A stretch of 63,644 nt of DNA, counting the filler, from Octopus bimaculoides (lineage: Eukaryota): NCBI RefSeq assembly GCF_001194135.2. It is 6 parts of 6 records of this genome, joined end to end, with 100 filler letters (N's around TTAATTAATTAA, not from the genome) between each part and the next. Parts side by side here need not be neighbours in the genome. Positions count along the whole stretch, not along the records: positions 17,133 to 36,743 come from NC_068989.1; 5 more parts are not named here. The stretch is one strand, 5' to 3'. The translations under genes and the position numbers were made by a program. Shown here piece after piece: positions 18,367 to 38,200 of this stretch (the first letter of the stretch is position 1; each line of letters opens with the position of its first letter). The notes beneath the pieces are model-generated. The model was not told where the DNA came from, made no database searches, and worked only from the letters and a program-made list of their open reading frames with translations.

Positions 18367-18706
18367 CTCTAGTGCACTGCATTTTTTTTTACTAAGATGG
18401 AATGATTTGGGATAGAATAGTTTGCATTAGTATTGTGAAATGGAACCAAAGGAACTATATTTCAAGTGAGACTGCAAGAAATATATTTGGCAAAGAACTC
18501 TATTTTGCAACTGATTATTATGGTGACAGTGATGGTGAAAGCACAGAAGATACATGATTATAAAGAGCTACAAAATACACAAAACAATGTGTATGTGTGT
18601 GTTTCATATAGTAGTTTTCCCAGTCAGAGACTGAAGTATTATATTGAGCAATCTTGCAAGAAAACTTATTGTATCAAGTTGAATTAAGAAAGCAAAGATA
18701 TCTTAC

Positions 18707-18762
18707 TAGTTTCTCCTTATTACTTGATCCTGGCTCACTCTCTAATGAGCCTTGAGTCGGAT
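18707..18762 (-). CDS. Candidate internal exon of the unidentified minus-strand gene (DPTQGSLESEPGSSNKEKL)
   Basis: Strong acceptor tttttatttcag and donor GTAAGA. The phase-1 start is compatible with the 24752-24770 exon. No family recognised. Confidence 0.35.
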
Positions 18763-21188: not shown

Positions 21189-21500
21189 TACCTTGGGCAA
21201 GTGTCTTCTACTATAGCCTCGGGCCGACCAAAGCCTTGTGAGTGGATTTGGTAGACGGAAACTGAAAGAAGCCCGTCATATATATGTATATATATATATG
21301 TGTGTGTGTGTGTTTGTCCCTCTCGCATTGCTTGACAACCGATGCTGGTATGTTTATGCCCCCGTCACTTAGCGGTTCGGCAAAATAGACCGATAGAATA
21401 AGTACTAGGCTTACAAAGAATAAGTCCCGGGGTCGATTTGCTCGACTAAAGGCGGTGCTCCAGCATGGCCGCAGTCAAATGATTGAAACAAGTAAGAGAG
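21189..21500 (+). mobile_element. 5'-truncated SINE, same family; other partial copies at about 28400-28565(-), 29165-29425(+), 37850-38090(-), 62039-62220(+), 62471-62970(-), 63395-63630(+)
   Basis: Shared diagnostic segments CCTTGGGCAAGTGTCTTCTACTATAGCC and GGTGCTCCAGCATGGCC. Confidence 0.85.
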
Positions 21501-24500
21501 AGATATGGAGTTTATATGAGGAAAAGTATATTATAGAATCTACCCTTATTGAAAATTTACTTCGAATAGCAGACTATATCCAATAGCACCTGTCTAAGAT
21601 ATTTCATCTTGTATATCATACATACATCAATCCATAGTTATTAATAAAACCAATGTAGGTGAAAAAATATTCTTCACACATGAGTGATTTTTAAGGCTTT
21701 AAGAGGATCTCTTCTCTCGTGTGCAAGCTGGATTCTAATTATTTCTACAGCTTTCACCAGACAGTCATTAAATTCAACCAACGAAAAACATACATGCTTT
21801 AGTATGGCCACGTCTAAAAGACTGCCATTTGCACAACTTCCACACATAGAACACACGAAGAGGAACAATTGCTGTGATGTTGTGGTGGGCTTCTGAACAA
21901 GGTACATAACTCTGTGCATGCTCTCGTATGCCTGATCAAAACAAATTGACTCCTATCTCTTATCTGGGAAGTATTACAATATCCAGCTGTAAAAATAGTC
22001 AACCAACCTTACAAATAAATAAACAAATAAAAAAACCTATCCCACTCATACAAGTATCTCAAAATAGATAATTCATCATTAAAACATAGACACATCTACT
22101 ATTTATGATCAAATATATTTTTTAATAAACTCACTATTCCAAACTAGTTAAGGTCGTTTTTTTTTATATATCAGCCACATCTTTTTATTTAACATATTTT
22201 ACTCACAGTCCAACTAACTTCAAGCTGTATACATTATATAGAGAATCCAAAATGGCCATGTTAATTAAATATTTTATAATTTATTAATTATATATATTTT
22301 TTTAATATTTTGAGTAAGTTTCCTTCAACAAAGAATAAAGAGGGAGATATTTGGCTGTTACACTTCACTGTTCTGCTAATTGACTTCTTGATACTTATGA
22401 GGTCGTTATTCTGGTAAAAGCTTGATGCTATTAATAAGACAATTTTTGTGTGTGATACTTATATAATGATAGGTAGAAGACGAGACATGTAGGTGGGATA
22501 TTTTAAAAGAAAACTTTGTTTATATATCTCAGCAATATGCTTTCTTATTTTGGCGTGAAGCCAACAGTTTTGATAAGAGGTGGGCAAGTCGATAACATCG
22601 ACTCCAGTACTTAAATGGCACTTATTTTATCGATGTATCTGAGTAATATTATTCGTAAATAGAGCTTCATGTGTTCTCTTAATCCCCTAAAACTAGGAAT
22701 AGATTTCAGTTATTAGTTATGCCCCTATCACCATCATTACTACTAAAACAGATTCACATCCATTACAGTATATCTGCAAAAGCAACACACACATAAAGCT
22801 ATCTAGCGGCATATTTAGGTTGCTTCGCTTATAGAGTTCAATAACCTGCTACGTTAATTCACAAGCGACAGAAGCCAAAAGCAGAATATAGACTAATACA
22901 TCTCAAAAAATATTTTAGAAATAATTATTGTAATGTATAAAAATGTAAACATATTTCTCATCTCTGTTTGCAAAATACGATCATGGATGACATTTACCTA
23001 CTGTTATTAACATGAAGACGACAACCACACAACAATTATCAATATAGAATTTAATTTACTGAATTTACATTGAGGAACTAACTCTTCTGACATGAGTATT
23101 TTAGAATAGAGGGGAAAACAGGAAATGAGTTGTGCATGTTCTTCTCGCTTAGATTAACGAACTGAAATTGCTCTTCTAAGATATTAAATTACATAAAATT
23201 ATTCTGTAACATTTTTTTTTTATAATAATAGTTTTATTCTCGAAAACAATCTAGATTTTGTTTTTCCTTTTTTAACAAGAACGAACTATATAGAAATGAA
23301 AGCAATTTGTTTCCGTTCCATGTTCTATGGAAGATAATCCAGATTCATCTACCAAAATGCTTCTCTCTTTAATTGCCAACAAAATCTATCAATCCAAAGA
23401 CAGGAACTATTTATGTCACATGACTAACGTTCAAATTGTGAATTGTGGTTCGTTTCGTTAGATTTCGATGCAACCCTCACGTCATGTATGTTTTCTAAGT
23501 TGTGGTAGTGCACTGTAAAATTTAATAAACATCAAAATATAAACTATTCCAAATAGTAAAAGACCAAATATTTTCAGAATATAATCAACATATATACCTA
23601 CACATGAACGGCAATTGTTCTAAAACACGATTGTTTTTTTTTTTTATAAATATCCAAGTTGAATTTCTAGTCATTATTACCAAAATGATTTACAATTTTA
23701 CATTAAGTAACTTAACCTCTGTAAAAATATAATTAGACCGGGAGACAACGTACCAACTAGATCTATATGAAGTTAATAAGATTTCTAATAGACAAAACAG
23801 AACAAAAAAAAAACCAATAAATAAAAGCAAAGTTGAAAGTATGAAAACAATAGAAGAAACGTGATTAAGAGGAGGCTTAAGACTAATGAAAATTAACACT
23901 AATTTGTTGGGGAAAAAATTAACCATTCTAAGTAAAAACTGGATTAGAAGTGTTGACAATAAAATATATGCTTTTAGCTTTTTTTTAGTTTACCTGCCAG
24001 AACAAAAACAATGTCAGAGAATATTCGAAACCAACTAGACAAAGAAACATCTAGTCTTTATGAATTTAAATTTAGATGAAACCCGTATTTTGTTTTTTAA
24101 ATTGCTTTTTATTATGTTTCTGACACAAATGTGGATTATGAAGAGTGAAGATTGCTGAATTCTTGTTGAATTCTTTTTAAAATAAATTAAAATATTTTGG
24201 TGTTCTTAGTTGAAATACACAAAGATTGTATTGGTAAAAAGCAAAGTGATCATGGATACGAGTAATTAAATGCAAATTTAATAATTCAACAATTATTTAT
24301 ATGTATAAACAGCTTTTTTTTATAATACAGGTTTAAAAAATTATTGGTTTTTGTTTCGGCGAAATGGGTGGGAAGTATTATTGAAACAAGCGAAGGGGGT
24401 GTCGTTAATATTCTGGTTTCGGATTGATTGGTGCTTTAACCTTACACCCACTTATCATTTTCAGAAAGATAACAGGTTTAAATATTAATTTAATATTAAA

Positions 24501-24751
24501 AAAGGTACAAAAAAAGAACTTTAATAATGAGAAGTCGGGTGATTATTGTACAAGGAGCTTCTTCCAAATCGTTGGTACTGGTTCTCAATAAGCGGCGAAA
24601 TAAACCGATATAACCATTGGTAGAACGATAATTATTTACAAAAAGGGAAGGAAAGTGAACAATGCTTCGTTGCGAAGAAAATATACTTCAAATAAAAGTA
24701 ATTAGATTGAGAAAATCACACAGAAACCCTATTGTTTTCCCGCGCGCTTAC

Positions 24752-24770
24752 CTGCTTCGGTATCCGCCAT
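24752..24770 (-). CDS. Probable first coding exon of an unidentified minus-strand gene (MADTEA + phase 1)
   Basis: aaatATGGCGGATACCGAAGCAG followed by the strong donor GTAAGC, in a CpG-rich patch. The ATGGCG start context is typical of housekeeping genes. TCACGTGA lies just upstream. Confidence 0.55.
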
Positions 24771-24780
24771 ATTTCTTGTA

Positions 24781-25340
24781 AGTAATCACGTGACCTGTTA
24801 CATTATAAAATAAGAATTGGAAATCGGTGGAAAACGAAACAAAATTGTATATTTGTTAATATTATATAACAACCGCCACTTTACAATCTAGGTTGCATAA
24901 GATAATATATAATTTCTCTGTGATACTGTCTAACCGAGAGGTTAAAGCTGCTTTAAAAGCTTCCGTTTTTGTTTCTTCGATAATCTAAATAATATTTCAT
25001 TCATTTTGAGACGTAAACAAGTTACTCAAATTTGTTTTCATACAGATTTGCCTACGTTTAAGTTTCTCTGAAGTTTTCAGTACAATATACATTTCGACAT
25101 ACCTATGCATTTTCACATAACTATATAGTAATCAAATATCGATATCGAGGCAATATTTAACAGACTGGCTTCATTCCTCCTGAACTCTTACCATCTGCTG
25201 ATTTTTGGCCAGTATTTCTGGAGTTTGCTCCTATATTGTGATGTAATGAAGCCCCCAACTTTACGGTTCGAAATAGAAAATTTTCAAAACAAATACTAAA
25301 CAATCAGATTTGTTTTGCTTTTAGCGCATGCGCAAACAAT
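24781..25340. promoter_or_regulatory. Probable (bidirectional) housekeeping promoter region
   Basis: E-box TCACGTGA at 24786-24793, NRF1-type palindrome GCGCATGCGC at 25324-25333, YY1-like ATGGCGG at the minus-strand ATG, and visibly higher CpG density than the flanks. Confidence 0.5.
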
Positions 25341-26027
25341 ATTTGCGATAAAAATTTTCTGTTTTCGAGGAATTAGAAATTATTTAAACTTAATATCTAT
25401 AGGAACTTTCCACATGTGACCAACTCTAATCCTAAACCGTAAATCTTAACCCTTAAACTCTAAAGGCCTTAACCCTAACCAAACCATCATCATCATTATC
25501 ATTTAACGTCCGCTTTCCATGCTGGCATGGGTTAAACGATTTAACAGGAGCTGGCAAGTCAGAAACTGCACCAGGCTCTACTGTCCGTTTTGGCATGAGT
25601 TTTGCGGCTGGATGCTCTTCCTAACTTTACAGTGTGGACTGGATGCTTTTTATGCGGCACCCTATCATATTTTTTAAAGAATTGTATCGAATATAACTGC
25701 ATGCATATAAACCAAAATGAATTAACCATCAAGCATTTGCTTCAAAAATGTTTTGTTTCAAACCATGAAGTCTGGAAATGCCGGTGTAATCTTTTATAAT
25801 TCCATTCATGTCTAGAATACTTTATAGAAATATTAAGTTGATCATAGTACCATATTATATAACTGCTACTTTATTTTATCTTTCTCCTTGAAAGATTATA
25901 GCCAAAATTGATCATTGGTGTGTTCTAAACACAGAAGGTAAATTGCTATACATAAATACCATCGACACCTTATTCAAATCTCTTATGATTCTGTCAAACT
26001 AGAGTTGTGTTCATAGCTGTACCCCAG

Positions 26028-26108
26028 TTGAGTTTGAACCGAAATGTGCTGGATTAGATCTTGCTCATAACGAATTTGTGAGCCTGTCTTTCTTAAATCC
26101 AAATACAG
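26028..26108 (+). CDS. Candidate exon with an LRR-like motif (VEFEPKCAGLDLAHNEFVSLSFLNPNT) of an unidentified plus-strand gene
   Basis: AG/GT bounded and phase-compatible with candidate exons 25895-25937 and 28646-28706. LDLAHNEF fits LxLxxNxL. Competing minus-strand exon candidates exist nearby. Confidence 0.3.
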
Positions 26109-26235
26109 GTACAGCACCGACTTTCTGGACACTGATAATCCATACTAATTCACTTCAAATTCCTGTGCTACCAGACTATTTTACTGGTACCTTGCTCAAT
26201 ACAGTATTAATAAATTTGTATATTTTATACTAATA

Positions 26236-26637
26236 CAGGCGTAGGAGTGGCTGTGTGGTAAGTAGCTTGCTCACCAACCACATGGCTCCTGGTTCAGTCC
26301 CACTGCGTGGCACCTTGGGCAAGTGTCTTCTACTATAGCCTCAGGCCGATCAAAGCCTTGTGAGTGGATTTGGTAGACGGAAACTGAAAGAAGCCTGTTG
26401 TATATATGTATATATATATATGTATGTGTATATGTTTGTGTCTGTGTTTGTCCCCCCAACATCGCTTGACAACCGATGGTGGTGTGTTTACGTCCCCATA
26501 ACTTAGCAGTTCGACAAAAGAGACCGATAGAATAAGTACTAGGCTTACGATAGAATAAGTCCTGGGGTTGGTTTGTTCGACTAAAGTCGGTGCTCCAGCA
26601 TGGCCACAGTCAAATGACTGAAACAAGTAAAAGAGTA
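26236..26637 (+). mobile_element. Full-length tRNA-derived SINE (major family in this window)
   Basis: Head GGAGTGGCTGTGTGGTAAG...GGTTCAGTCCCAC with A/B-box-like motifs, internal (TA)n(TG)n, tail GACTGAAACAAGTAAAAG. Near-identical to other copies in the window. Confidence 0.9.
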
Positions 26638-27409
26638 ATGTACAGGTACTTGTTTTTCATCTAGTTATTTAAGTGAATTCAGTATTTGTTTGATTTAGAG
26701 TGTCCCCACACCTGGTCCTGTAATCTGAAATAGCTCTAGAACTAAAGCTTACAGAAAATCAACTATTTTACCTGTGCTGCTTTCAAGTAGTAATCTAACA
26801 GTATACTATCCATTAGCAATCCTTTCACATCAGTGGTTCCCTAAATAACTACAGTGATCCTATCTGCTATGTTCATACTTTATCATCTCTGATTCTAACT
26901 GCTATTGAAAGCAAAAGCTTTTTCGTTACTTTTGTAGTACTTATTTAATGTTTGGGTGAATGTTTCATTACAAACCACTCTGCATCCTTTGCAGCAGACT
27001 TCCATAACAAAGCATGTATTAAATGGTTGTTACATTACAGATGTATACATACTCATCCCTGCACACAGAATTTTAGCAGACTCATTTGTATGGAGACACA
27101 CATAGTTTATACAGACTCACTTGTATGGATGCAAACCAGAATACCTATGCATAGAATCATTTTTGCACCACATGTCTACTGACTGAGCATTTCTTTACAA
27201 TTCTAGCACTAAAAGAAAATTGCATTCACCATATCATTACCTAATATTCGTATCATAAACATAAAATTTCTGAATTACATAACTGAACCTGAACTAACAT
27301 GTCCTAATATTAAAATGGAAGTGCTTTTACTATCTGCAGCATCTTTGTTTTATTCTGCTCAGACTAGTTACAGCCAATATTAGTAATGTTATATAGGAAA
27401 TGTATTTCA

Positions 27410-27731
27410 GTTCTATATTTAAGAGATGAGGAATTATGTACATTATTTACATTCAATGGATATTTATCCTCATCTTGTTTGCTGTTAAGACAATGTTTCG
27501 GCTGATATACCCTCCAGCCTTCTTCAGGTGTCTTGGGGAAATTTCGAACCTGGGTTCTCATTCCTAAGGAATTTAAAGCATTAGGACTGGGTTCGCATTC
27601 CTTAGGAATGAGAACCCAGGTTCGAAATTTCCTCAAGACACCTGATGAAGGCTGGAGGGTATATCAGCCAAAACGTTGTGTTAACAATAAACAAGATGAG
27701 GACAAATATCCGTCGAATGTAAATAATGTAC
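27410..27731. mobile_element. Penelope-like element remnant: inverted pseudo-LTR pair carrying minimal hammerhead ribozyme motifs
   Basis: Inverted arms at about 27437-27571 and 27598-27731. 15-bp direct repeat AGGAAATGTATTTCA at 27395-27409 and 27732-27746. Each arm has CTGA(T/A)GA-A-GGCTG..CAGCC-(G)AAAC(G)TT. Confidence 0.75.
27638..27681 (+). ncRNA. Minimal type I hammerhead ribozyme motif (decayed, G12>A); mirror copy on the minus strand at 27488-27532
   Basis: ACAC-CTGATGA-A-GGCTG(10 nt)CAGCC-aAAA-CGTT-GTGT: stem I ACAC/GTGT, stem II 5 bp, palindromic ACGT helix III, GUU cleavage triplet. Confidence 0.6.
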
Positions 27732-27944
27732 AGGAAATGTATTTCATTCAATGTTTTCTACAGATTAAAATTAGTTTCTATTAATCTGTGTTATGTACTT
27801 TTCTACATTCTCTCAAATACCTTTTACCTTGTACTTGTTTCAGTCTTTGGATGTACTCATGCTGGAGCACTGCATCGAAGGGTTATAGTCAAGCAAATTG
27901 ACTCCAGTACTTCTATTTTTATATCTGGTACTTCTTCTACCAGT

Positions 27945-28185
27945 CTCTTCTTATTTCTTTATTGCCCACAAGGGGCTAAACATAGAGGGTACTAACAAGG
28001 ACAAACAAACAGATTAAGTCAATTACATTGACCTCAGTGCATAACTGGTACTTAATTTATCAACCCCGAAAGGATGAAAGGCAAAGTCGACCACGGCGGA
28101 ATTTGAACTCAGAACGTAGCGGCAGACGAAATACCGCTAAGCATTTTGCCCGGCGTGCTAACGTTACTGACAGCTTACCGCCAGT
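27945..28185 (-). mobile_element. Second tRNA-derived SINE family; other copies at about 30145-30335(+), 31765-31965(-), 16700-16830(+)
   Basis: Head ...GTTAGCACGCCGGGC...GTTCTGAGTTCAAATTCCGCC, core GACTTTGCCTTTCATCCTTTCGGGG, tail CCCCTTGTGGGCAATAAAGAAATAAG, repeated in the window. Confidence 0.85.
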
Positions 28186-29233
28186 CTCTTCTGCCAAACT
28201 GATAAGTTGCAGGAATGTAAACAAACCAACACTGATCGTCAAACAATACAAGGTGTGCAGACACAAACACAAAGACATACGCATAGACACATGCATTAGG
28301 AAGGGCATCCACCTGTAGAAACCATTTCAAAGAAGACAGTAGATCATTGTGCAGTCTTTGGGCTTGGTATCTTCTGTCAAACTCAGATGGATGTTAAATG
28401 ATGATTATGAAACTACGGGCTTCTGCAGTTCCTGTCAACCAAATTCACTCACAAAGCATTGGTTGGCCCAGGGCTACAATCAAAGACACTTGCCCAAAGT
28501 GCCACACAGTGGACTGCACTCAAAACCATATGGTTCCAAACTGCGGTTTTTAAACACAGCCATAAATATACTTATCCAGCTTTTTTCTTCATTTTGTCAT
28601 TTCTGCAGTCTTTACCTTTAATTCTTTCAAAATTAAATAATTCAGAGATGTTAGCTACACAAGAAAATCAATACATCTTATTTAAACCACACTACAACTT
28701 CAGCAGGTATGATGAAGGATGTGTTTAGTTGATGAGGTCAGAATAATACCAAAACAAATTCAGAGTTATCTTTCACAGAAAATACAAATTCAGAGTTATC
28801 TCTCACAGAAAAAATGAAAACATTGTTACTCATTGACTAATATAATTTTCTTTTTCTCCTCATTTATTTCTAGCTAGCTTTTTAATATTCCACACATTAG
28901 ATATATTAACACTGACTCACAGTCCTAATGCTTCAAATAATTTTTTTAAAGAATTCATTTAATGATTTAATGTCTAACACATTTCTGGTGGCTTTTCATC
29001 TAATTACTTAGCATCGTTTTTGAAGAATATACTTATCTCTGAAGGAGTTACTTACTTCCTGTTCAATTTTGAGCTTTCAGACCTCTTGACATTTACTTAT
29101 TTAATTGGTTGTTGATTCCAGCATGATTTGATTGTAGGATGTAGTGAATTGCAATAAAACTTCTACTAGAGCATCAGGCTGACTGAAGCCTTGTGCATGG
29201 GTTTGGTAGATGGAAACTGAAAGAAGCCTGTTG

Positions 29234-29267
<34 letters not shown>

Positions 29268-29440
29268 CTTACATCCCCATAACTTACCAGTTTGGCAAAA
29301 GAGAATGATAGAAGAAATACCAGACTTCAAAAAAGGATGAGTACTGGAGCTGATTCATCCGACTAAAAGATTCTTTAAGGCAGTGCTCCAGCATGGCTGA
29401 AGTCTAATGATTGAAACAAGTAAAACACACACATACACAC

Positions 29441-29472
<32 letters not shown>

Positions 29473-29771
29473 CAAAAGGATGTTATAATACTATTTCACA
29501 GCCATACCAACAATCCAGCATACTTCCATCATCAGCTGCCCCACGAATATCATTGTGGTTTTGACACCTGGACAGTACCATTCAATCCGGCAGTGTCAAC
29601 AGCACTAAAATAGGTGTTGTTTGGGAACAAACAAACCAAAGAAACCACAACTTTCAAACACATTTACCCTATGCACAACCGTATCGGTAAATAAATATAT
29701 GTATCGTTTGTAGAAAATATAAATCTGGAGAAGAAGCACGCTCTAAGATGTAGAGGAGTATATATTTTTTA

Positions 29772-29941
29772 CTGGGGAAGGCTAGTTTATGGGATTACCC
29801 TGGGTTTCCCGTCCATAAAGGGTTTAACTTTATGGTGTATCGTCAGACCCCAAAACCTGTTAGTCTTAGGCAATATGCCATAAAGGTAAACCCTTTATGG
29901 ATGGTAAGCCCAGGATAATCCCATAAACCAGCTTTCCCCAG
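29772..29941. mobile_element. Palindromic MITE with long TIRs and TA flanks (Tc1/mariner-like)
   Basis: Imperfect inverted arms of roughly 60 bp (CTGGGGAA.GCT.GTTTATGGGATTA...) with TA on both sides. Confidence 0.75.
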
Positions 29942-30940
29942 TAAAAAAAGAAAAATATATATATATATACACAATGGGCTTCTTTCAGTTTTTGCCTATC
30001 ACTTACAAGGCCTATAGTTTGAAGGCAAATCCCTAAGATGTCATGCAGTGGAACTGAACCCAAGAACACAAAGCTGGGAAGTAAGCTTCATAACTACAGA
30101 ACCAAATTCGATGACTGGCATCTGTGCCAGTGGAGTGCTAAGAGCTTAGTGGTAGTTCGTCTGCCATTATGTTCTGAGTTCAAATTCCGCCAAGGTCGTC
30201 TTTGCCTTTCATCCTTTCGGGGTTGATAAATTAAGTACCAGTTACGCACTAGGGTCGATGTAATCGACTTAATCCCTTTGTCTGTCCTTGTTTGTCCCCT
30301 CTATGTTTAGCCCCTTGTGGGCAATAAGAACATAAAGACAGACAAAATGCTGCTAAGCATTTTTCACAGTGTACTAATAATAATAATAATAATAAGAGCA
30401 CTCAGAGAGCGCAATCCTCCGCCAAGGCAACACCAATGTCCTCTCAATGATTAGCCGGAGATGATTTTTAAAATGAGAATATCTGAAATAAACTCGACTC
30501 CTCTCACAAATGGGAACATTAAAAATGAACCCGACCGCTCTCAGAAATTAAGTTAAAAAACAGGGAAAAAAATCCAGAATCCTTGTCTGGTACCAGATCG
30601 ATCCCAAAATCTAATCAGTTTGTGTCAGTCACGAGGCCAAACATCCCTGAAAGTTTCATCCGAATCCATCTAGCAGTTCTTGAGGTATCTTGTCCACAGA
30701 CAAACGTGACTGAAAACTATACCTCTGCCTTTGCTAAGGCAGAGGTAATAAAAGCTTTAATTGAAATACATAACGTTGCAATGAAATACACAAGCCAAAA
30801 TAATGATAAGATCTTTATTTACATATATATATATTTACAGTTGGTACTCTATCATGAAATATCTCTCAAATATTACTGAGTGTGAAACACATAGAATGTT
30901 TATGAAATTAATGATCTGCAGAGAAAAATCATGAAATTCT

Positions 30941-31161
30941 TTAACCCTTTAGCATTCAGATTACTTTGTCAGATATAATTGCATATTTATTTACATCGCT
31001 TTGAATTAATTATGCATTAACTCCTAGCTTTGAAATTTTATTTGTTTATTTTTAGAATGACATTGTAGGGCAGGTGTAAGAAGCTAGATCCGATAAGTCT
31101 GAACATAAAACAGGTTGAAAATGTGGGTCAAATATGACAAGTTTAAATGCTAAAGGGTTAA
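30941..31161. mobile_element. TTAA-flanked piggyBac-like MITE (second family)
   Basis: TTAACCCTTTAGCA...TGCTAAAGGGTTAA termini. Related copies at about 40922-41135 and 50900-51060. Confidence 0.75.
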
Positions 31162-31213
31162 AGTGTAACAAAATAATAAAAAAACCCAGCTGACTGGCTG
31201 AAAGAAATGAGGT

Positions 31214-31269
<56 letters not shown>

Positions 31270-32476
31270 CACACAATAATCTCTCTCACTCATACATATA
31301 AAGTAAAACATATATATGTATATATATATATATATATACATACACAATATCTCTCTCATCTATACATAAAGTAGAAGTAAATATACATATCTGTCTCATC
31401 TATACACATATATAAAGGGTAAAAAAATGGATAAAGCACCTTTTTTTAGTCATATTGACTCATAGGGCTGTTTTCCTGGATTCTCTGGTGTATATATCCC
31501 TCCTGGACGGTATGCTGGACCATCACAGAAATATTCACTTTTACCAGCTGTTGTAGATTGGAGCAACATGAAATGAAGAGTCTTGCTCAAGAACACAATA
31601 CATTGCCTGGTGTAGGGATCTTACAATCATGAGTTTAACACCCTAACCACTAACTCAAGTGCCTCCACATATACATATATAAAGCCAAAGTAAATAGATT
31701 TTTATCGGTTTCAAGGCTGAGTACTATAGCTGCTCAATCAACTGAACTGCCTGCTCATTGACTTATATTTTTGTTATTTCTTTACTGCCCACATGGGGCT
31801 ACACACAAAGGGGACAGACAAATGGATTAAGTCGATTACATCGACCCCAGTGTGTAACTGGTACTTATTTAATGGACCCCGGCGGAATTTGAACTCAGAA
31901 CGTAGCAGCAGACGAAATACTGCTAGGCATTTCGCCCGGCGTGCTAATGTTTCTGCCAGCTCACCACCTTTGACTTATATGTTTGTGGTTGAGTATTCCA
32001 CAAACATATCTTGTACCCTTATTATATTATAATCCTCAAGCAGAATCAGTGTGAGTCCATCCAGTGAGCTTCCACATAGTTTTGTCTACCTAATTTCTCT
32101 AACCAAGGTAAGAGTTGACTTTGGGGATATAACAAACGATACATAATAAAATGCCATGCAGTGGGATTGAACCTGGGATTTCATGATTGCAAAATCAAGC
32201 TTCTTAATCATTCAGCCATGCCTGTATCTATATATGTCATTTCAGTGCCATGTTTGGGTCATTGTATAATAATGACCCTTTCTATTCATAATTTGATTCT
32301 CCACCACAAAGGTGTCTTAACCAACAGAGTTAAATACATCATTGTGTTAATGACAAAATACAAACTCAATCAAGACTTTTCAGTTGTGAGGTTTGATACC
32401 TACTCGACACAACTTATTGTCTTAAACCTATATTTTATATCGGTATATTTCATGATATGTATGTTCATCACTATAG

Positions 32477-32600
32477 ATGGCTAGTCGTCTATTGTTATGG
32501 CTGCTACAGCATGGCCATACTCGAGTAGGTCGTCCAAACGCGAAATATGTAGATTGACCAAGATGGAGGGCATTCATGGGTTAGAACTGTCCAAGCAAGC
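32477..32600 (+). mobile_element. RTE-type LINE ORF C-terminal fragment
   Basis: ASRLLLWLLQHGHTRVGRPNAKYVD resembles the S.L.LW.P.HG....GRP...Y.D motif at RTE C-termini. Confidence 0.5.
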
Positions 32601-34459
32601 TCAACCAGATTATTACTACACAATGTTTTTAATACTTTATGGAGGTGTTCATGAAGATTCATATATCATTAACTACTTTTAGTACCAAACTGCTTGAACT
32701 TTCCCTGGTTTTATAATATAAATTTCCTGTTTTAAAGTGATCTAAGTTGAAATCTTTCATTAAATTTTCATGAAAATATATACTCCAATCACCAACTTAA
32801 TGATAAAATTATTTTCTGAAAATTTTCATTATTTTCAATATTAATTAAACAAAGTGTATTTAAACAAAAATATGGTAACAAAAGGGTTAAGGTGATATAA
32901 ATTAAAACCTTCCATCAAAATCTCACATTACTTTATGTTCTAAACACTAGCTTAATAATGACAAGGTTATTCTATTAAATTCTTCAGTTTTTTCAACATT
33001 AATTCAAACAAAGGCAGTGTATTTCCATATAAATATGGTAACAAAACGGTTAATAATAAAGACTAGGTAGATATTTGGATCCATTTGTGCTTCATTCCTG
33101 AGTATCAATTTTCCTCCACCTGGAGGTTTTCTTTAACTATATATAGTTAGACACTGTAGCAATATATTCAGACAGTGAACAATTTTAAGCATAATGAGAG
33201 AGTGATGCCTACTATCTCCAGCCTCTAATCAGTTTTGTATATCCTTTTCTGATTCGCAAGGTAACAGTGGTTAGCTCCAGTTTCCATAGCAGTGGATCAG
33301 AGATAAGTTTCTCCCTGAATAGTACAGTGGTCTTAGGTAGATATATATATTTTCCCACAGGAAGAACTGAACCTGAAATTGTAATCCCATTACTCATCAA
33401 TTTTCAACAATACTTGAGTTAGCTGGACATACACATTGGACAATAATTGAACACCGAATTTCTCCTTCACAGTTGCCTGGAACACCATTCACTTAGTCAT
33501 CTGTTCTCTTTCTTTTCATACACACACACACACGTGTGTGTGTATTAGCTGAAGTTATGTGTAGATAATTTCTTTGGTGTGATGTATATACATGCATTCA
33601 TTTTTTTTCTGACTTCAGCTTTATCATAGCTTTTTTTAAAATTTTAATTCACAGAATAACAATAATCCGTTTTGAAACAATTCCTGATATCATTTCTAGT
33701 TTTGCATAATGACTTTTTTTTTTTAAATGAACCTTTATAAAGCTTTAAATAGCTAATTAGCACCAACGTTGACAGTTTGCTTTTAAATTTTAACAAAAAT
33801 TTTAAATTTATAACACTGAAGATCACTAGCAAGGGGACTTAACCAATGTATTTTTATGTCTGCACAAACACATAAATAATTTCTTTTCTTTTGAGAAAAT
33901 GCATGAAGCATCATGAATTTGAAATATGAATACAAGAAGCAATTCCTTTTAGTCTATATATATGTCAGTTATTCATTATAAAGCCATTTTTGTTATTGTT
34001 TGCTTCATAACCTTGATCAGCAAATATTGCTTAGAGTAATGAAATTAAAGTCAAACATTTAAAAAATTTTAGTTAATATCCCTTAAATGATACATTATCA
34101 ATCTTGGTACCAACATTTCAGTTTATATTCTGTAAACTGAGGGGAAATCATGTCAAAATTTTGGAAAACCGGATTAAAATATGCAACATTTCACTCATTT
34201 CAGTGTTCACAATAGTGCATAACCAAAGCTCAGAGTCTGTAATATTTACAACCAACTTATAGTTTCCAAGCAAGTTTTATGGTTTTCACTATAAATAATA
34301 TTCTCAAGTACTTAATGCCTTTTGTGTCATGAATTCTAAATAATCGAATTCTGAATCACGCAGAGCTATCTTTGATAGTAGATACTTAGTATATTTTTCT
34401 TGTTATGTTCTTGTGTTGAAAAGTTAATGGAAAAGTTAGTGTGGAAAGCTGAGTTATAA

Positions 34460-35293
34460 TTATTCATGTTTTAATTTAAATGTTGAGTTGATGATCATAT
34501 GTTTTGCTCGGCGCAACATCTTTCGCAATTTTGTGATTTTATTCCGACAGTTATTTGTTTCACGGCAATTTGAGAAACACTGGAGTTGTTTAAGAATACC
34601 GACAACATCAGAAGAACAGTCATGGTGTTTGTTATTTTGGTTGCAAGAGATAGAAAATTGTGATTCACCATCTTGAAAGTCATCAGCCACTTGTCGGTAT
34701 GCAGAAACAGCAAGCTTGTATAAATATTTCCCTGCAAGGAGATAGTCCTGCATGACAGTCATGAAAGTAGTGTATTCACTATGGTTGATGTAGGAATTTT
34801 TATTTTTATCAACTAACTCAAATGTACATATTGCTCTTTGAAGAAACTGAATGAATTCAGAAAGACGCTGTTTGGCCCACTGCAAGCGAGCTTTTTGTCG
34901 ACCATGATGATGGGCGTCACTTTCAATCTGTTTAATCAAACGTTCTCCAAGAGAAGCAATCACACAACCAACAACAGTTTTCAAAGAAACATCATTGGTG
35001 ACTACTGGTGTAGGTAGAATTTGAAACCAGTTATTACGAGTAGGTTTTAATTTTCCAGGAAAGAAATTATTCTCATTTCCTTCAATTATTCTCAAGTAAT
35101 GGGTGTCAGGGTCGATTTTTGGTTGTGCTTTGTTTGAGACAAGAGACGTGAGTATTGTGGTCAACAGACCTGATGTTTTCTTTGCAGTTTCTTCTACCGT
35201 TTTCCCTGAATCTTTAGAACGATCATGAGGGTTATATGCCTCACACCTGAGAAAACCAAGCAGGTAGAACAGAAGTATTACTCCAATATTCAT
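34460..35293 (-). CDS. Uncharacterised 277-aa secreted protein with one EF-hand-like loop; coding region is a single exon
   Basis: By far the longest gap-free ORF in the window (834 nt), in AT-rich DNA where other gap-free frames in the track are under about 150 aa. Hydrophobic N-terminus MNIGVILLFYLLGFLRCEA is signal-peptide-like. Strong acceptor (ttttctattttcag) 7 nt before the ATG. FELVDKNKNSYINHSEY resembles an EF-hand loop. No repeat content. Confidence 0.85.
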   Translation of the reverse strand: MNIGVILLFYLLGFLRCEAYNPHDRSKDSGKTVEETAKKTSGLLTTILTSLVSNKAQPKIDPDTHYLRIIEGNENNFFPGKLKPTRNNWFQILPTPVVTNDVSLKTVVGCVIASLGERLIKQIESDAHHHGRQKARLQWAKQRLSEFIQFLQRAICTFELVDKNKNSYINHSEYTTFMTVMQDYLLAGKYLYKLAVSAYRQVADDFQDGESQFSISCNQNNKHHDCSSDVVGILKQLQCFSNCRETNNCRNKITKLRKMLRRAKHMIINSTFKLKHE

Positions 35294-38200
35294 ATTGATT
35301 CTGAAAATAGAAAATAAAATTATAAGTTAGTCTTAACTAAAGGAGAATTTGACAGCTTTGAGCTAGCCAAATATGATGACAATAATAATGATTATGATGA
35401 CAATGACTAGTAAAATTAAAGGAACACGAAGTTTTCATCTACCTGTCAGCTATTTCCAATCAGTAGATGACAATAAAACCATAACAGTGGTACACCACCC
35501 TGGTGGCTTACCACAACCAGAATCACGAATTTTACATTCTGTATGGCAATTCTCTTGACCAAGATGTAAACTATACAGTTGATCTGAAAGAAGATGCAGT
35601 TGAAATATTGTACTCCCGTAACGTAGCATCTTTATAAGTTTATAGTTTCATACTTTATTTTAATATACTCTCGCAATATTGTATATATATGCACAGAATA
35701 AAATCTCCAACTCATACAAAAAGAAAAAAAAAGAAGACTAAATATTTTCTCCACAACTGTAAAAGCGGGTACGTCTTATGCAAGCGTGAGCTTATATACG
35801 TTTGTAAATGAGATAGCTAGTAGAACCATACACAGCTGCCGAGGATAAAACAGACAAGTAAGTTCGTTCATAACGACTTCATACATTAACACGATCACAA
35901 TTTAGTGTAGGGGAAATTAACTCCCCAGGCGTACTAGATGTTAAGAGCGTGTCTCTTTTTCTCATAGAAAGATCTATGACAATCTTGTCGATTTTCTTTT
36001 TTTTTTTTTCGCTCTCAAGAGTAATTATTAACTTTTAAGAAAGCTTAATTACTAAACATTTTTTAAAAATCGCTATGTAACCCCTGTAGATCATGATTTA
36101 AAGGTAATTAAGCAGACAATTTTAATAACGATTATTAGCAAGGGTTTACAGGTTGAGTTATTTCCCTTTATATAGAAAAATCTGGGCAGCACAAAGAAAA
36201 ATATTGGCGAGCTGGCAGAATGTTAACCGATTATGAAAATAAAGAAAAGAAAGTACTCGATCGATTACACTGTCTTAGAGAATATTAGTACTTTCATCTA
36301 AAAAATCTTTAACACAACTCAAAAGGATAGAGGGTTATCACGAGAAAATTGAATAAGTTTTTCTTTATTTGCATTATATATATATATATAAATATATATT
36401 TCGGGAATAAATGATGAATTTTTCCCTTATGAGGTTTTTTTCACGCTAGCTACTTGATAAATTCTTGTAAAAGAATTCGTCCTATTATTGAATTTAAATA
36501 TATTACCAGAATATATTCAGTGCTGAATTTATTCTAAGTAAGAGGCATATTTACCGAGATGCAATTCGAAATTCCCGCCACTTACATAGGGAAATAGCGA
36601 TGAACAGTCGTCTATATGCTATGCTGGATACATGGTGTTCGTTTGGTATGTTGATTCACTGTTTATTTCTATTTTTCTGGACCATATTATACTGACGAGT
36701 AGAAGTTGTATAATGCTACAATAACTACGAAATCATGATCTATNNNNNNNNNNNNNNNNNNNNNNNNNNNNNNNNNNNNNNNNNNNNTTAATTAATTAAN
36801 NNNNNNNNNNNNNNNNNNNNNNNNNNNNNNNNNNNNNNNNNNNCACACACACGTACACGCACACACACATGAATACGCGCATGTGTGTGCGCGTGCGCTG
36901 TCTATGTGAATGCGTGTGTGTGTGTGTGTGTGTGCGTGCGTGTGTAAAGCGCTTAAGTTAATAATCATTACAATGCAAGTTGGAATTAAAGGAATGCAAA
37001 CAAAATCAAAGCAAAGTAAAAGTTCACACTTTATAATTTAACTTAACTCTGATCTGCTTATAGATACTGACGATAAGTGAGATAAGGCATAGATACGTAG
37101 ATAATTATATATATATATATATATATAGGGATATATATATATATATANNNNNNNNNNNNNNNNNNNNNNNNNNNNNNNNNNNNNNNNNNNNNNNNNNNNN
37201 NNNNNNNNNNNNNNNNNNNNNNNNNNNNNNNNNNNNNNNNNNNNNNNNNNNNNNNNNNNNNNNNNNNNNNNNNNNNNNNATATAGGGAGAGAGATATAGC
37301 AATATATCACGGACTATTGGATGCTCCCAACGCACCACCTCACTCTATTGTAGCTTTCAAATGACGCCACCACGCTGGATAGTCAGGCAGACTAACATTT
37401 TCCCTGAATGGAGCGCCAGTCCATCGCATGGTTACCCATTTACAGCTGAATCGACTGGAGCAATAGAAATTAAATTTTTGCGCAAGAACACAACACCGGT
37501 CTTGGAATCGAAACAACGATCTGCTGCGCAGAACTCTGAACGCCTGAAGTTCGCTTCCCAACCACATGGTTCTGGGTTCAGTCCCACTGTGCGGCATCTA
37601 GAGGAGGTCTTTTCTACTAGAGCCCTGAGCCGACCAAATACTTGTGAATGGATTTAGTCCATCCGACAGTCTTCTATACAGTTATTGATGCGATCAAGCT
37701 TCTTTCGTAAGGTATGGGTCGAACTGAGATGATCAAAACTTATTCTTTCGCTAGATGTCTTGAGACTTCATAATTGCGAGACGAATTTCCTAACCATTTC
37801 GCTATACTATATGCTATCTCCTTAAATGTAGGAGACAGTTTTGACCCCTTATCTTTTATCTTTTACTTGTTACAGTCATTAGATTGCGGCCATACTGGGG
37901 CACCACCTTGGAGAAGTTTTAATCGAATGAATCGACCCAGTACTTATTATTTTAAGCCTGGTACTTATACTATCGGTCTCTTTTTCTCGAACCGCTATGA
38001 TACGGGGACGTAAAGACACCAGCGTCGGTTTTCAAGTGGTGATGGTAGACAAGCACAGACACAAAGACGCACACACATAGATACATACATACATAACACT
38101 CAGTTATGTCCAAATAAGCCTCTTATATGATAGAAACATCCAAATAGCTGTAGCTAAAGCGCTCATTGATCATATGAATAAACAATTCTAACACATACAC

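What the first reader, a model, noticed from the sequence alone, without database searches (positions are those of the whole stretch)
34460..35293. Orphan secreted 277-aa protein with a lone EF-hand-like loop
Seen: an 834-nt uninterrupted ORF with a signal-peptide-like N-terminus (likely cleavage CEA|YN). Residues 158-174 read F-ELV-D-K-N-K-N-S-Y-I-N-H-S-E-Y (loop at 34772-34810), flanked by long amphipathic helices. The mature chain has seven Cys, five of them at 217-249, a His triplet at 128-130 and a very basic C-terminal helix (KITKLRKMLRRAKH). Known: this loop fits the PROSITE EF-hand pattern at every position except position 6 (Ser instead of Gly-class), and EF-hands normally come in pairs. 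Inference: this may be an extracellular Ca-binding or self-dimerising protein of a family I cannot name. An N-glycosylation sequon (N170-H-S) sits inside the putative Ca loop, which could switch binding off.
Basis: partly seen in the sequence, partly recalled or inferred. Interest (0 to 1): 0.8.

Follow-up and report, generated by a model that had tools for sequence, protein, structure and literature searches.

The report
Cephalopod-only secreted protein, EF-hand look-alike loop
The ORF is a real, conserved octopus gene (Octopus bimaculoides LOC106874618) for a probably secreted, cysteine-bonded helical protein found only in coleoid cephalopods, but its calcium-binding-like loop is missing from squid/cuttlefish-type orthologues and from the paralogue, so calcium binding is not what the family does.

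Summary
The ORF is 100% identical to Octopus bimaculoides LOC106874618 isoform X2. UniProt already auto-names isoform X1 "EF-hand domain-containing protein".

It is not an orphan. Orthologues occur in other Octopus species, Argonauta and two probably decapodiform lineages. A roughly 30%-identical paralogue clade sits 7 Mb away on the same chromosome. An exhaustive HMMER search of 1.84 billion proteins found nothing credible outside cephalopods. dN/dS is 0.13-0.24, and synteny and intron position are conserved, so the gene is real.

- D162 and E173, the two key Ca ligands, occur only in octopod clade-A proteins.
- The probable decapodiform orthologues have a 3-residue deletion in the loop. The paralogues carry Ser at position 1 and Ser or Asp at position 12.
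- The loop is as variable as the linker. There is no second EF-hand, the Pfam score is below cut-off, and the weak KChIP hit vanishes with a family profile.
- The N-x-S sequon inside the loop is kept in 7 of 9 sequences, better than the Ca ligands.

Best reading: a secreted, glycosylated, disulfide-stapled helical protein of an unnamed coleoid-restricted family, probably an extracellular ligand or binder. Expression could not be checked and function is unknown. Interest is modest.

The parts
34460..35293 (-). Coding part of the last (large) exon: 277 codons plus stop (stop at 34460-34462). It is identical to O. bimaculoides LOC106874618 isoform X2.
   Evidence: ORF. (P0011 identical). (window 24460-36743 is 100% identical to CM046609.1 locus L010). 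(dN/dS 0.13-0.24).
35301..35320 (-). Polypyrimidine tract and AG splice acceptor (AG at 35302-35301). The exon starts at 35300 (AATCAAT ATG). In isoform X1 a 28-codon upstream exon about 12 kb away, outside the piece, joins here in frame.
   Evidence: sequence tattttcag|aatcaatATG. (exon 1 ends ..TTGAG|GTAAGT in O. sinensis and O. bimaculoides). The same acceptor position is seen in Argonauta, P0003/P0024/P0014 genomic contigs and clade B genes.
35237..35293 (-). Signal-peptide-like N-terminus, residues 1-19 (MNIGVILLFYLLGFLRCEA|YNP). The h-region is 13 residues, too short for a membrane span.
   Evidence: the strongest hydrophobic window is at the N-terminus; the only other above the cut-off, residues 97-115, is weaker and interrupted by polar and charged residues. 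(every family member starts with a comparable hydrophobic stretch; AYNP follows it in clade A). No SignalP was available, so this is inferred.
34940..35068 (-). Most conserved block of the family, residues 76-118 (F.GKLKP..NWF.ILPTPV.T..VSLKTVVGC.IASLGER). It includes the clade-A-specific Cys110.
   Evidence: mean pairwise identity 0.63, the highest of all segments. (invariant G80 K81 L82 N88 W89 F90 L93 P94 T95 S103 L104 T106 V108 G109 G116).
34772..34810 (-). EF-hand-like loop D162-Y174 (DKNKNSYINHSEY). It forms the turn between two predicted long helices (133-163 and 172-202).
   Evidence: EF-hand_1 17.6 bits against a cut-off of 25.4; pattern mismatch at position 6. (D162 and E173 occur only in octopod clade A; 3-residue deletion in P0003/P0006; segment identity 0.28). 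(helix-turn-helix in the model).
34778..34786 (-). N-glycosylation sequon N170-H-S172 inside the loop.
   Evidence: (N-x-S kept in 7 of 9 aligned sequences, in both clades).
34547..34645 (-). Cys-rich segment, residues 217-249 (C217, C226, C239, C243, C249). With C156 these are the six Cys shared by both clades, enough for three disulfides.
   Evidence: C156, C217 and C226 are invariant; C239, C243 and C249 are present in every full-length member.
34463..34546 (-). Basic amphipathic C-terminal helix, residues 250-277 (RNKITKLRKMLRRAKHMIINSTFKLKHE). CRNKITKL[RK]K.LRR is almost invariant within clade A but is replaced by a non-basic hydrophobic helix in clade B.
   Evidence: alignments. (helix 247-276 in the model).

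Best explanation
The ORF is the main coding exon of Octopus bimaculoides LOC106874618. It encodes a soluble protein of the secretory pathway.

Its layout is:
- a cleaved signal peptide (residues 1-19);
- a poorly conserved linker (20-75);
- a very conserved block (76-118);
- a bundle of long alpha-helices (about 104-202);
- a Cys-rich segment;
- a basic amphipathic C-terminal helix.

Six Cys shared across the family would give three disulfides, and a conserved N-x-S sequon sits on an exposed inter-helix turn. The protein belongs to an unnamed family seen only in coleoid cephalopods. That family split into two paralogue clades before octopods and the probably decapodiform lineages sampled here diverged.

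The most likely function is an extracellular ligand or binding protein. It would act through the conserved 76-118 block and, in this clade, through the basic C-terminal helix as a receptor-, glycosaminoglycan- or membrane-binding face.

The EF-hand-like loop is a variable hairpin turn of this bundle. In the octopod lineage it happens to carry Asp at position 1 and Glu at position 12. It is not a family-level calcium site.

Shown here: gene identity, orthology and paralogy, purifying selection, non-conservation of the loop, and absence of known domains. Inferred: secretion, disulfides, glycosylation, and the ligand or binder role.
For: Identity:
- The ORF is 100% identical to P0011 and the X1 isoform P0012 (XP_014777893.1, A0A0L8GV07).
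- The piece is 100% identical to CM046609.1.

Family:
- Orthologues are O. sinensis 97%, a Logan octopod contig (about 90%, judged by eye), Argonauta 66%, and P0003 and P0006 at 54% and 49%.
- The paralogue clade (P0004, P0007, P0008, P0009, including Acanthosepion pharaonis) was found with a clade-A-only profile at E=8.5e-34 in a 1.84-billion-protein library. Pairwise BLASTP to P0007 gave 9e-41.
- Apart from one repeat-summed LRR hit, nothing non-cephalopod was found.
- One assembly (ERZ21867824) carries both clades. O. bimaculoides has them 7 Mb apart on one chromosome.

Real gene:
- dN/dS is 0.128 against O. sinensis and 0.236 against Argonauta.
- The downstream Ran_BP1-domain neighbour is syntenic in Argonauta.
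- The intron just 5' of the ATG is conserved in both clades.

Secretory features:
- All members have an N-terminal hydrophobic stretch, and there is no convincing membrane-spanning segment besides the N-terminal stretch.
- Six Cys are conserved and the N-x-S sequon is kept in 7 of 9.
- Clade B has R-x-x-R|S furin-type sites, aligned with KK/RR/RK in clade A.

Fold: the AF2 model is all-helical. The core at residues 110-200 has pLDDT of about 57-78 by 10-residue block.

The loop is not a family feature.
Against: - No expression data could be obtained.
- No signal-peptide predictor was available.
- Isoform X1 adds 30 N-terminal residues ahead of the hydrophobic stretch. This could alter targeting.
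- The structure model is poor overall (mean pLDDT 50.7; residues 1-105 are below 50), so the bundle topology is uncertain.
- The ligand or binder role is inference from architecture only.
- Within octopods all six canonical Ca-ligand positions are intact and conserved between Octopus and Argonauta. Lineage-specific Ca binding is therefore not excluded.
Confidence: 0.6

Rival explanations
1. Octopod-specific gain of a working extracellular EF-hand. On an older helix-turn-helix, the octopod lineage acquired Asp1 and Glu12. The loop now binds Ca2+, perhaps only on dimerisation since it is unpaired, and acts as a Ca-dependent conformational switch. Glycosylation of N170 could modulate it.
For: - The loop DKNKNSYINHSE has proper ligands at positions 1, 3, 5, 9 and 12 and Ile at position 8.
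- It closely resembles the KChIP1 EF-3 loop.
- Pfam EF-hand_1 gives E=0.0027.
- All ligand positions are identical in Octopus, the Logan octopod and Argonauta.
- Loop length and N164, Y168, N170, S172 and Y174 are ancestral, so only two substitutions were needed.
- Clade A has an odd seventh Cys (C110), which could make a covalent dimer.
Against: - The score is below the Pfam cut-off (17.6 against 25.4). Ser replaces Gly at position 6, so PS00018 fails.
- There is no second EF-hand. Residues 204-215 lack ligands at positions 3, 8 and 12 (direct reading of the sequence).
- The flanking helices are about 30 residues long and predicted as an antiparallel hairpin, not an EF-hand geometry.
- The whole surrounding region is equally conserved between Octopus and Argonauta, so conservation of the ligands carries no special signal.
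- The conserved sequon puts a probable glycan on the position-9 ligand residue.
- The KChIP hit disappears with the family profile.
Confidence: 0.15
2. The protein is not released but anchored or retained. With the isoform X1 start, the 30-residue basic N-terminal extension plus the hydrophobic stretch act as a type II signal anchor. The helical domain would then sit on the cell surface or in the lumen of a secretory organelle.
For: - An in-frame upstream exon with an ATG is present in O. bimaculoides, O. sinensis and Argonauta. The segment (H/T)MQ.V..TT.R is conserved and basic residues lie next to the hydrophobic core.
- O. vulgaris is annotated from the second in-frame Met of that exon.
Against: - The hydrophobic core is only about 13 residues and is followed by a good -3/-1 cleavage motif.
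- The upstream exon is much less conserved than exon 2. I count roughly 11 of 28 residues by eye from the sequences, against 66% for exon 2. Twenty-eight stop-free codons are not significant, with a chance of about 0.26 by my own arithmetic.
- RefSeq also models isoform X2, which starts at the exon-2 ATG.
- Clade B proteins and P0003 begin directly with the hydrophobic stretch. The longer N-terminus of P0006 is translated intron, not a real extension.
Confidence: 0.1
3. It is a precursor whose active product is the cationic amphipathic C-terminal helix, acting as a membrane-active or antimicrobial peptide or as a heparin-binding peptide. The rest would serve as a pro-domain.
For: - The C-terminal 28 residues hold about 10 basic residues on one helical face (my count from the sequence) and are the most strictly conserved clade-A-specific element.
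- Mature pI is 9.44.
- Dibasic sites RK257 and RR261 are present.
Against: - The helix is tied to the Cys-rich segment by C249, and its hydrophobic face looks like part of the bundle.
- The gene is single-copy per clade and under purifying selection (dN/dS 0.13-0.24). That is unlike typical fast-evolving, expanded effector peptides.
- The rest of the protein (76-118, 174-202) is more conserved than the tail across the family.
- The gene's UniProt accessions and those of its paralogue do not occur in the supplementary tables of the O. vulgaris skin-mucus or ink proteome papers. This is weak evidence.
Confidence: 0.07
4. It is a chance ORF or a dead gene copy with no function.
Against: - The ORF is intact in every lineage examined.
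- dN/dS is well below 1, at dS up to 0.96.
- Synteny, splice site and six Cys are conserved.
- RefSeq models exist with two isoforms.
Confidence: 0.02

Closest known systems
Canonical EF-hand loops, e.g. EF-3 of KChIP1 / neuronal calcium sensors (Pfam PF00036, PROSITE PS00018)
   Same: Both have a 12-residue loop with D-x-N-x-N-x-Y-I-N-x-x-E between two helices. About 9 of the 12 loop residues look identical or similar to KChIP1 DINKDGYINKEE, by my own count from the alignment.
   Different: - Ser replaces Gly at position 6, and the loop is unpaired.
- The Pfam score is below cut-off.
- This protein has a signal peptide and disulfide Cys. NCS proteins are cytosolic and myristoylated (established knowledge).
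- The key ligands are absent from the probable decapodiform orthologues and from the paralogues.
- The similarity is lost with the family profile.
It is not a member.
Extracellular EF-hand proteins of the SPARC/BM-40 type and the CREC family (recalled from knowledge, not fetched)
   Same: They are secretory-pathway proteins that combine disulfides, glycosylation and EF-hand loops.
   Different: Those proteins carry paired EF-hands in recognisable domains (SPARC_Ca_bdg, EF-hand_7). No such Pfam hit occurs in any of the nine family members, and no PDB sequence hit either.
Clade B paralogue, O. bimaculoides LOC106868141 / O. sinensis LOC115216191 (uncharacterised)
   Same: - 30-37% identity over residues 71-269 (BLASTP 9e-41).
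- Same six Cys, same conserved 76-118 block, and same single coding exon with an intron just 5' of the ATG.
- Same chromosome.
   Different: - It lacks Cys110, the EF-like D1/E12 and the basic tail. Its C-terminus is hydrophobic (VLYFFISEF).
- It has a clear R-x-x-R|S furin-type site in the linker.
Long-chain four-helix-bundle hormones and cytokines (e.g. prolactin, PDB 1rw5)
   Same: They are secreted, of similar size, disulfide-bonded and built of long helices. Prolactin appears among the weak Foldseek hits.
   Different: - The hit is not significant (E=2.4, TM 0.23), as with all other generic helical bundles listed.
- The predicted helices are joined by short turns (residues 131-132 and 164-171). 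Those cytokines have long crossover loops (established knowledge).
This is a resemblance in kind only.
Other cephalopod-restricted secreted proteins of unknown function, e.g. obimac0019980 in the octopus optic lobe (bioRxiv 10.1101/2022.06.11.495763)
   Same: It has a signal peptide, partly helical AF2 models, and no HHpred or Foldseek relatives, and it is cephalopod-only.
   Different: Probably a different gene. That paper reports E~3e-88 to O. sinensis and only 0.003 to Sepia. This gene gives 2.4e-180 and has 49-54% identical orthologues in probable decapodiform lineages.

Membership tests
EF-hand (PROSITE PS00018 / Pfam PF00036) | The loop matches the PS00018 pattern D-x-[DNS]-{ILVFYW}-[DENSTG]-[DNQGHRK]-{GP}-[LIVMC]-[DENQSTAGC]-x(2)-[DE]-[LIVMFYW]. 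| tested here: not met
   No exact match. It matches only if position 6 is freed (S167) (the pattern was written from memory of PROSITE).
EF-hand (PROSITE PS00018 / Pfam PF00036) | The score reaches the curated Pfam cut-off. | tested here: not met
   EF-hand_1 scores 17.6 bits against a cut-off of 25.4, E=0.0027. No other EF-hand model hits. Only 3 of 9 family members hit at all.
EF-hand (PROSITE PS00018 / Pfam PF00036) | EF-hands occur as a pair, or at least with a pseudo-partner. | tested here: not met
   There is a single pattern or Pfam match. The KChIP-aligned second region (204-215, DDFQDGESQFSI) has F at position 3, S at 8 and I at 12, and varies among orthologues.
EF-hand (PROSITE PS00018 / Pfam PF00036) | Ca-ligand residues (positions 1, 3, 5, 9, 12) are conserved among homologues. 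| tested here: not met
   - D162 becomes L or I in the probable decapodiform orthologues and S in the paralogues.
- N166 becomes G, K, D or Q.
- E173 becomes Q, H, S or D.
- P0003 and P0006 have a 3-residue deletion.
- Loop identity is 0.28, against 0.49 and 0.59 for the flanking helices.
EF-hand (PROSITE PS00018 / Pfam PF00036) | The protein binds Ca2+. | not testable with these tools
   This needs recombinant protein (ITC, 45Ca overlay, Tb3+ luminescence).
Neuronal calcium sensor / KChIP | Significant sequence similarity across the four-EF-hand domain, in a cytosolic protein. | tested here: not met
   The best PDB hit is KChIP1 at E=0.09 over residues 155-243 only. There are 0 hits at E<=10 with the family profile. 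The query has an N-terminal signal-peptide-like stretch.
Unnamed coleoid family (LOC106874618 / LOC106868141 group) | Shared conserved blocks (GKL..NWF..LPT..SL.T.VG; FL...IC; DY...YLYK.A.S) and six Cys, with significant profile similarity. | tested here: met
   (E=8.5e-34 to the paralogue with a clade-A-only profile).
Unnamed coleoid family (LOC106874618 / LOC106868141 group) | Orthology of the window gene with LOC118765122 (O. sinensis) and the Argonauta gene: synteny and gene structure. | tested here: met
   - The same two-exon layout and splice sites are present.
- The same downstream Ran_BP1-domain neighbour is present in Argonauta.
Secreted (signal-peptide) proteins | A cleavable N-terminal signal peptide and no other membrane span. 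| tested here: inconclusive
   A hydropathy scan and the -3/-1 rule fit, and the feature is present in all members. However, no dedicated predictor was available, and isoform X1 has a 30-residue N-extension.
Long-chain helical cytokines / hormones | An up-up-down-down four-helix bundle with long crossover loops and structural similarity to known members. | tested here: not met
   Foldseek's best such hit is prolactin at E=2.4, TM 0.23. No hit has E<0.25. The predicted inter-helix links are short. The model is low-confidence, so this is weak evidence.
RI-type leucine-rich repeat | Tandem 28/29-residue LRR units. | tested here: not met
   Only one ~60-residue stretch (193-254) resembles the 59-residue double unit of P0005, at 26-32% identity. 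The profile E-value (7e-27) comes from summing 19 near-identical repeats. There are no tandem units in the query.

The most novel reading that the evidence does not exclude
The two paralogue clades could be a coleoid-invented pair of secreted signalling ligands: processed, disulfide-stapled helical proteins in the manner of helical hormones or cytokines, whose receptors are unknown. In the octopod lineage, one of them has additionally turned an inter-helix turn into a working single extracellular EF-hand. That would be a traceable, two-substitution birth of a Ca2+ site on a non-EF-hand scaffold.
Probability: 0.1. Interest if true: 0.65.

Novelty: new variant of a known kind. Interest (0 to 1): 0.3.

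Why it matters
The practical value is a correction. That label should not be propagated.

Beyond that, the finding defines a small protein family with no Pfam model:
- It has two ancient paralogues and a conserved gene structure.
- It carries six conserved Cys and a very conserved 40-residue block.
- It is detectable only in coleoid cephalopods.

Lineage-restricted secreted proteins are candidates for cephalopod-specific signalling or tissue innovations. Without expression or biochemical data, though, this is one uncharacterised family among many. The octopod-only EF-like loop would become interesting only if it were shown to bind Ca2+.

Tried and rejected
Expression and literature:
- An exact-product look-up of the 277-aa ORF found nothing, because only the longer isoform is on record.
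- Logan contigs for P0003, P0014 and P0024 were inspected in the hope that they were transcripts. All show a polypyrimidine tract plus AG directly before the ATG, so they are genomic. L009 is ambiguous.
- Searches for every LOC, XP and UniProt identifier and for the run accessions found nothing.
- Two O. vulgaris proteome papers mention an 'EF-hand domain-containing protein'. Their supplements do not contain this gene's accessions or its paralogue's.
- obimac0019980, from the octopus visual-system preprint, is similar in kind, but its reported homology statistics do not fit this gene.

Homology and structure:
- The first AF2 run, with a 4-sequence alignment, gave pLDDT 41 and was discarded. 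The 9-sequence run gave 50.7.
- Its Foldseek search returned only generic helical bundles at E>=0.25 and TM<0.3.
- The family profile against PDB sequences gave nothing at E<=10. P0007 also gave nothing.
- P0003 hit the designer Kelch propellers SAKe6BE (E=2.7e-4, no single stretch passing). I rejected this as a repeat-summed artefact.
- P0005, a 1269-aa LRR protein, was rejected likewise.
- The Myb_DNA-bind_4, SMG1 and RXLR Pfam hits are noise (E>0.03).
- The upstream exon of isoform X1 was sought in the piece and is not there. It lies about 12 kb upstream.
- A third protein search with the 9-sequence profile added no new members.
Full report
**Observation.** The ORF is real and lies on the minus strand, 34460..35293, with an ATG start and 277 codons plus a stop. 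It is much the longest ORF in the 19.6-kb piece.
- Residues 158-174 read FELVDKNKNSYINHSEY, and D162-Y174 is window 34772-34810.
- Cys are at 17, 110, 156, 217, 226, 239, 243 and 249.
- HHH is at 128-130, and the sequons are N170-H-S and N269-S-T.
- The tail is basic, and the mature protein has pI 9.44 and a mass of about 29.7 kDa.
- The strict PS00018 pattern fails only at position 6 (Ser). With that position freed the pattern matches once.
- The relaxed pattern turned up in 0.17% of composition-preserving shuffles. It is unusual for one protein but not for a proteome.

**What the locus is.** The protein is identical to P0011, O. bimaculoides LOC106874618 isoform X2. Isoform X1 is XP_014777893.1 / UniProt A0A0L8GV07, which UniProt auto-names "EF-hand domain-containing protein". 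Window 24460-36743 is 100% identical to CM046609.1 (locus L010).

The gene spans about 13 kb. A short upstream exon of 28 codons, ending ..TTGAG|GTAAGT, lies about 12 kb upstream and outside the piece. It splices to an acceptor (tattttcag|AATCAAT ATG) whose exon starts at window 35300. RefSeq also models an isoform that starts at the exon-2 ATG.

The downstream neighbour on the same strand is a 587-aa Ran_BP1-domain gene. Its first coding exon starts at window 24770.

**Relatives.**
- Word-indexed searches and one exhaustive HMMER search of 1.84 billion representative proteins found orthologues in O. sinensis (97%), O. vulgaris, an unnamed octopod (P0014, about 90% judged by eye) and Argonauta hians (66%), plus two more distant lineages (P0003 54%, P0006 49%).
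- A second clade, about 30% identical, comprises P0004 (Argonauta), P0007 (O. bimaculoides LOC106868141), P0008 and P0009.
- P0009's 90%-identity cluster includes Acanthosepion (Sepia) pharaonis. P0008 is 87.5% identical to P0009. P0008 comes from the same assembly (ERZ21867824) as the clade-A protein P0006.
- From this I infer that P0003 and P0006 are decapodiform orthologues, and that the duplication predates the octopod-decapodiform split.
- The paralogy is robust. A profile built from clade A alone found P0004 at E=8.5e-34. BLASTP of the window protein against P0007 gives 9e-41.
- In O. bimaculoides the two genes lie on the same chromosome, at 15.06 Mb and 8.04 Mb.
- Both clades keep an intron immediately 5' of the start codon and a single large coding exon.
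- No non-cephalopod protein was found, apart from a 1269-aa LRR protein. Its score is the sum of 19 near-identical weak repeats.

**Selection and synteny.** Nei-Gojobori dN/dS is 0.128 for O. bimaculoides against O. sinensis (dS 0.108). It is 0.236 against Argonauta (dS 0.96). The Ran_BP1-domain neighbour is conserved downstream in Argonauta. This is a functional gene, not a chance ORF.

**The EF-hand question.**
- In Octopus and Argonauta the loop has proper ligands at positions 1, 3, 5, 9 and 12 and Ile at position 8. It resembles KChIP1 EF-3.
- Pfam EF-hand_1 scores only 17.6 bits against a cut-off of 25.4, and no other EF-hand model hits.
- No second loop exists. The KChIP-aligned region 204-215 has F, S and I at positions 3, 8 and 12.
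- Only 3 of 9 family members hit EF-hand_1 at all. The KChIP hit (E=0.09) disappears entirely with the family profile.
- Column by column, position 1 is D in octopod clade A, L or I in P0003 and P0006, and S in clade B. Position 12 is E, then Q or H, then S or D.
- P0003 and P0006 delete positions 6-8.
- Mean pairwise identity of the loop is 0.28, the same as the linker (0.27). The flanking helices score 0.49 and 0.59, and block 76-118 scores 0.63.
- What is older than the EF-likeness is the loop length together with N164, Y168, N170, S172 and Y174. The N-x-S sequon is kept in 7 of 9 sequences.
- The loop is therefore a variable, probably glycosylated hairpin turn. In octopods it acquired the two acidic end residues. 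An octopod-specific Ca site is not excluded, and I rate it at about 0.15.

**Architecture and likely mode of action.**
- All members begin with a short hydrophobic stretch followed by small residues. The window protein has no convincing membrane-spanning segment besides it.
- Six Cys (156, 217, 226, 239, 243, 249) are shared by both clades. Clade A adds an invariant seventh, C110.
- Clade B carries R-x-x-R|S furin-type sites in the linker. These align with KK, RR or RK in most clade A proteins.
- AF2 with the 9-sequence alignment predicts long helices at 104-130, 133-163, 172-202, 233-242 and 247-276. Confidence is moderate only for residues 110-200 (pLDDT about 57-78 by 10-residue block). The mean is 50.7.
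- Foldseek against the PDB gave nothing better than E=0.25 and TM 0.28, all generic helical bundles.
- From these features I infer a secreted, N-glycosylated, disulfide-stapled helical protein that acts extracellularly as a ligand or binder. The invariant 76-118 block would be the family's functional surface.
- The near-invariant basic helix CRNKITKL[RK]K.LRR would be a clade-A-specific interaction face for a receptor, glycosaminoglycan or membrane.
- This step is inference. No expression or biochemical evidence was obtainable.

**Comparison with known families.** It is not an EF-hand family member, since four defining features were tested and not met. It is not an NCS/KChIP protein and not demonstrably a helical cytokine. 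It has no Pfam, PDB-sequence or fold relative. The closest characterised-in-kind examples are other cephalopod-restricted signal-peptide proteins of unknown function, such as obimac0019980. Judged by its reported E-values, that gene is probably a different one.

**Novelty and verdict.**
- The gene model is already in RefSeq and UniProt.
- What this analysis adds is the family definition (two ancient clades, seen only in coleoids) and the demonstration that the EF-hand label rests on a lineage-specific look-alike.
- Uncharacterised lineage-restricted secreted proteins are common, so interest is modest (0.3).
- It would rise if the octopod loop proved to be a newly born Ca site, or if the family proved to be a coleoid-specific ligand system.

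**Dead ends.**
- All Logan contigs were genomic.
- No literature mentions any identifier of the gene.
- Two O. vulgaris proteome supplements lack its accessions.
- Repeat-summed hits to an LRR protein and to designer Kelch propellers were judged spurious.

Noticed in passing
window 24678-24782 and 18689-18790, minus strand: The first coding exon (ATG at 24770, MADTEAGKRAGKQ...) and a later exon of the downstream neighbour, a 587-aa Ran_BP1-domain gene. Both are conserved by tblastx with the gene downstream of the Argonauta hians orthologue, so the locus is syntenic.
   Followed up: partly
window 19623-19861: A run of N (assembly gap) inside the piece. The ORFs listed across it (19555-19914) are artefacts of the Ns.
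   Followed up: yes
window 21190-21500, 26237-26637, 29145-29272: Copies of an interspersed repeat (75-94% identical). Further copies lie in the 12-kb intron of the gene in L010. It looks like a dispersed SINE-type element.
   Followed up: partly
window 27437-27572 / 27597-27732 and 27943-28149 / 30137-30343: Two inverted-repeat pairs: one of 136 nt at 93% with a 24-nt spacer, and one of 207 nt at 87% set 2 kb apart. The first pair explains the near-identical 83-aa and 90-aa ORFs on opposite strands (27364-27636 minus, 27533-27784 plus). It is probably a pair of head-to-head repeat insertions.
   Followed up: no
P0005 (not in the window), against window protein residues 193-254: A 1269-aa RI-type LRR protein matches the family profile 19 times. 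Each 59-residue double unit is 26-32% identical to KLAVSAYRQ...DCSSDVVGILKQLQCFSNC...NKIT. I judged this a repeat-summed artefact. The shared 'DCS.D..GI..L..C' motif is unexplained.
   Followed up: partly
L011 10001-10879 (O. bimaculoides CM046609.1, 8.03-8.05 Mb): The clade B paralogue LOC106868141 has a conserved furin-type R-K-E-R|S site (R-K-Q-R, R-N-R-R and R-K-R-R in other species) about 50 residues into the protein. This suggests proprotein processing, which clade A has largely lost.
   Followed up: partly
window ~33528-33552: A short palindromic (CA)n(TG)n microsatellite (cacacacacgtgtgtgtgtgtg) lies about 0.9 kb downstream of the stop codon.
   Followed up: no
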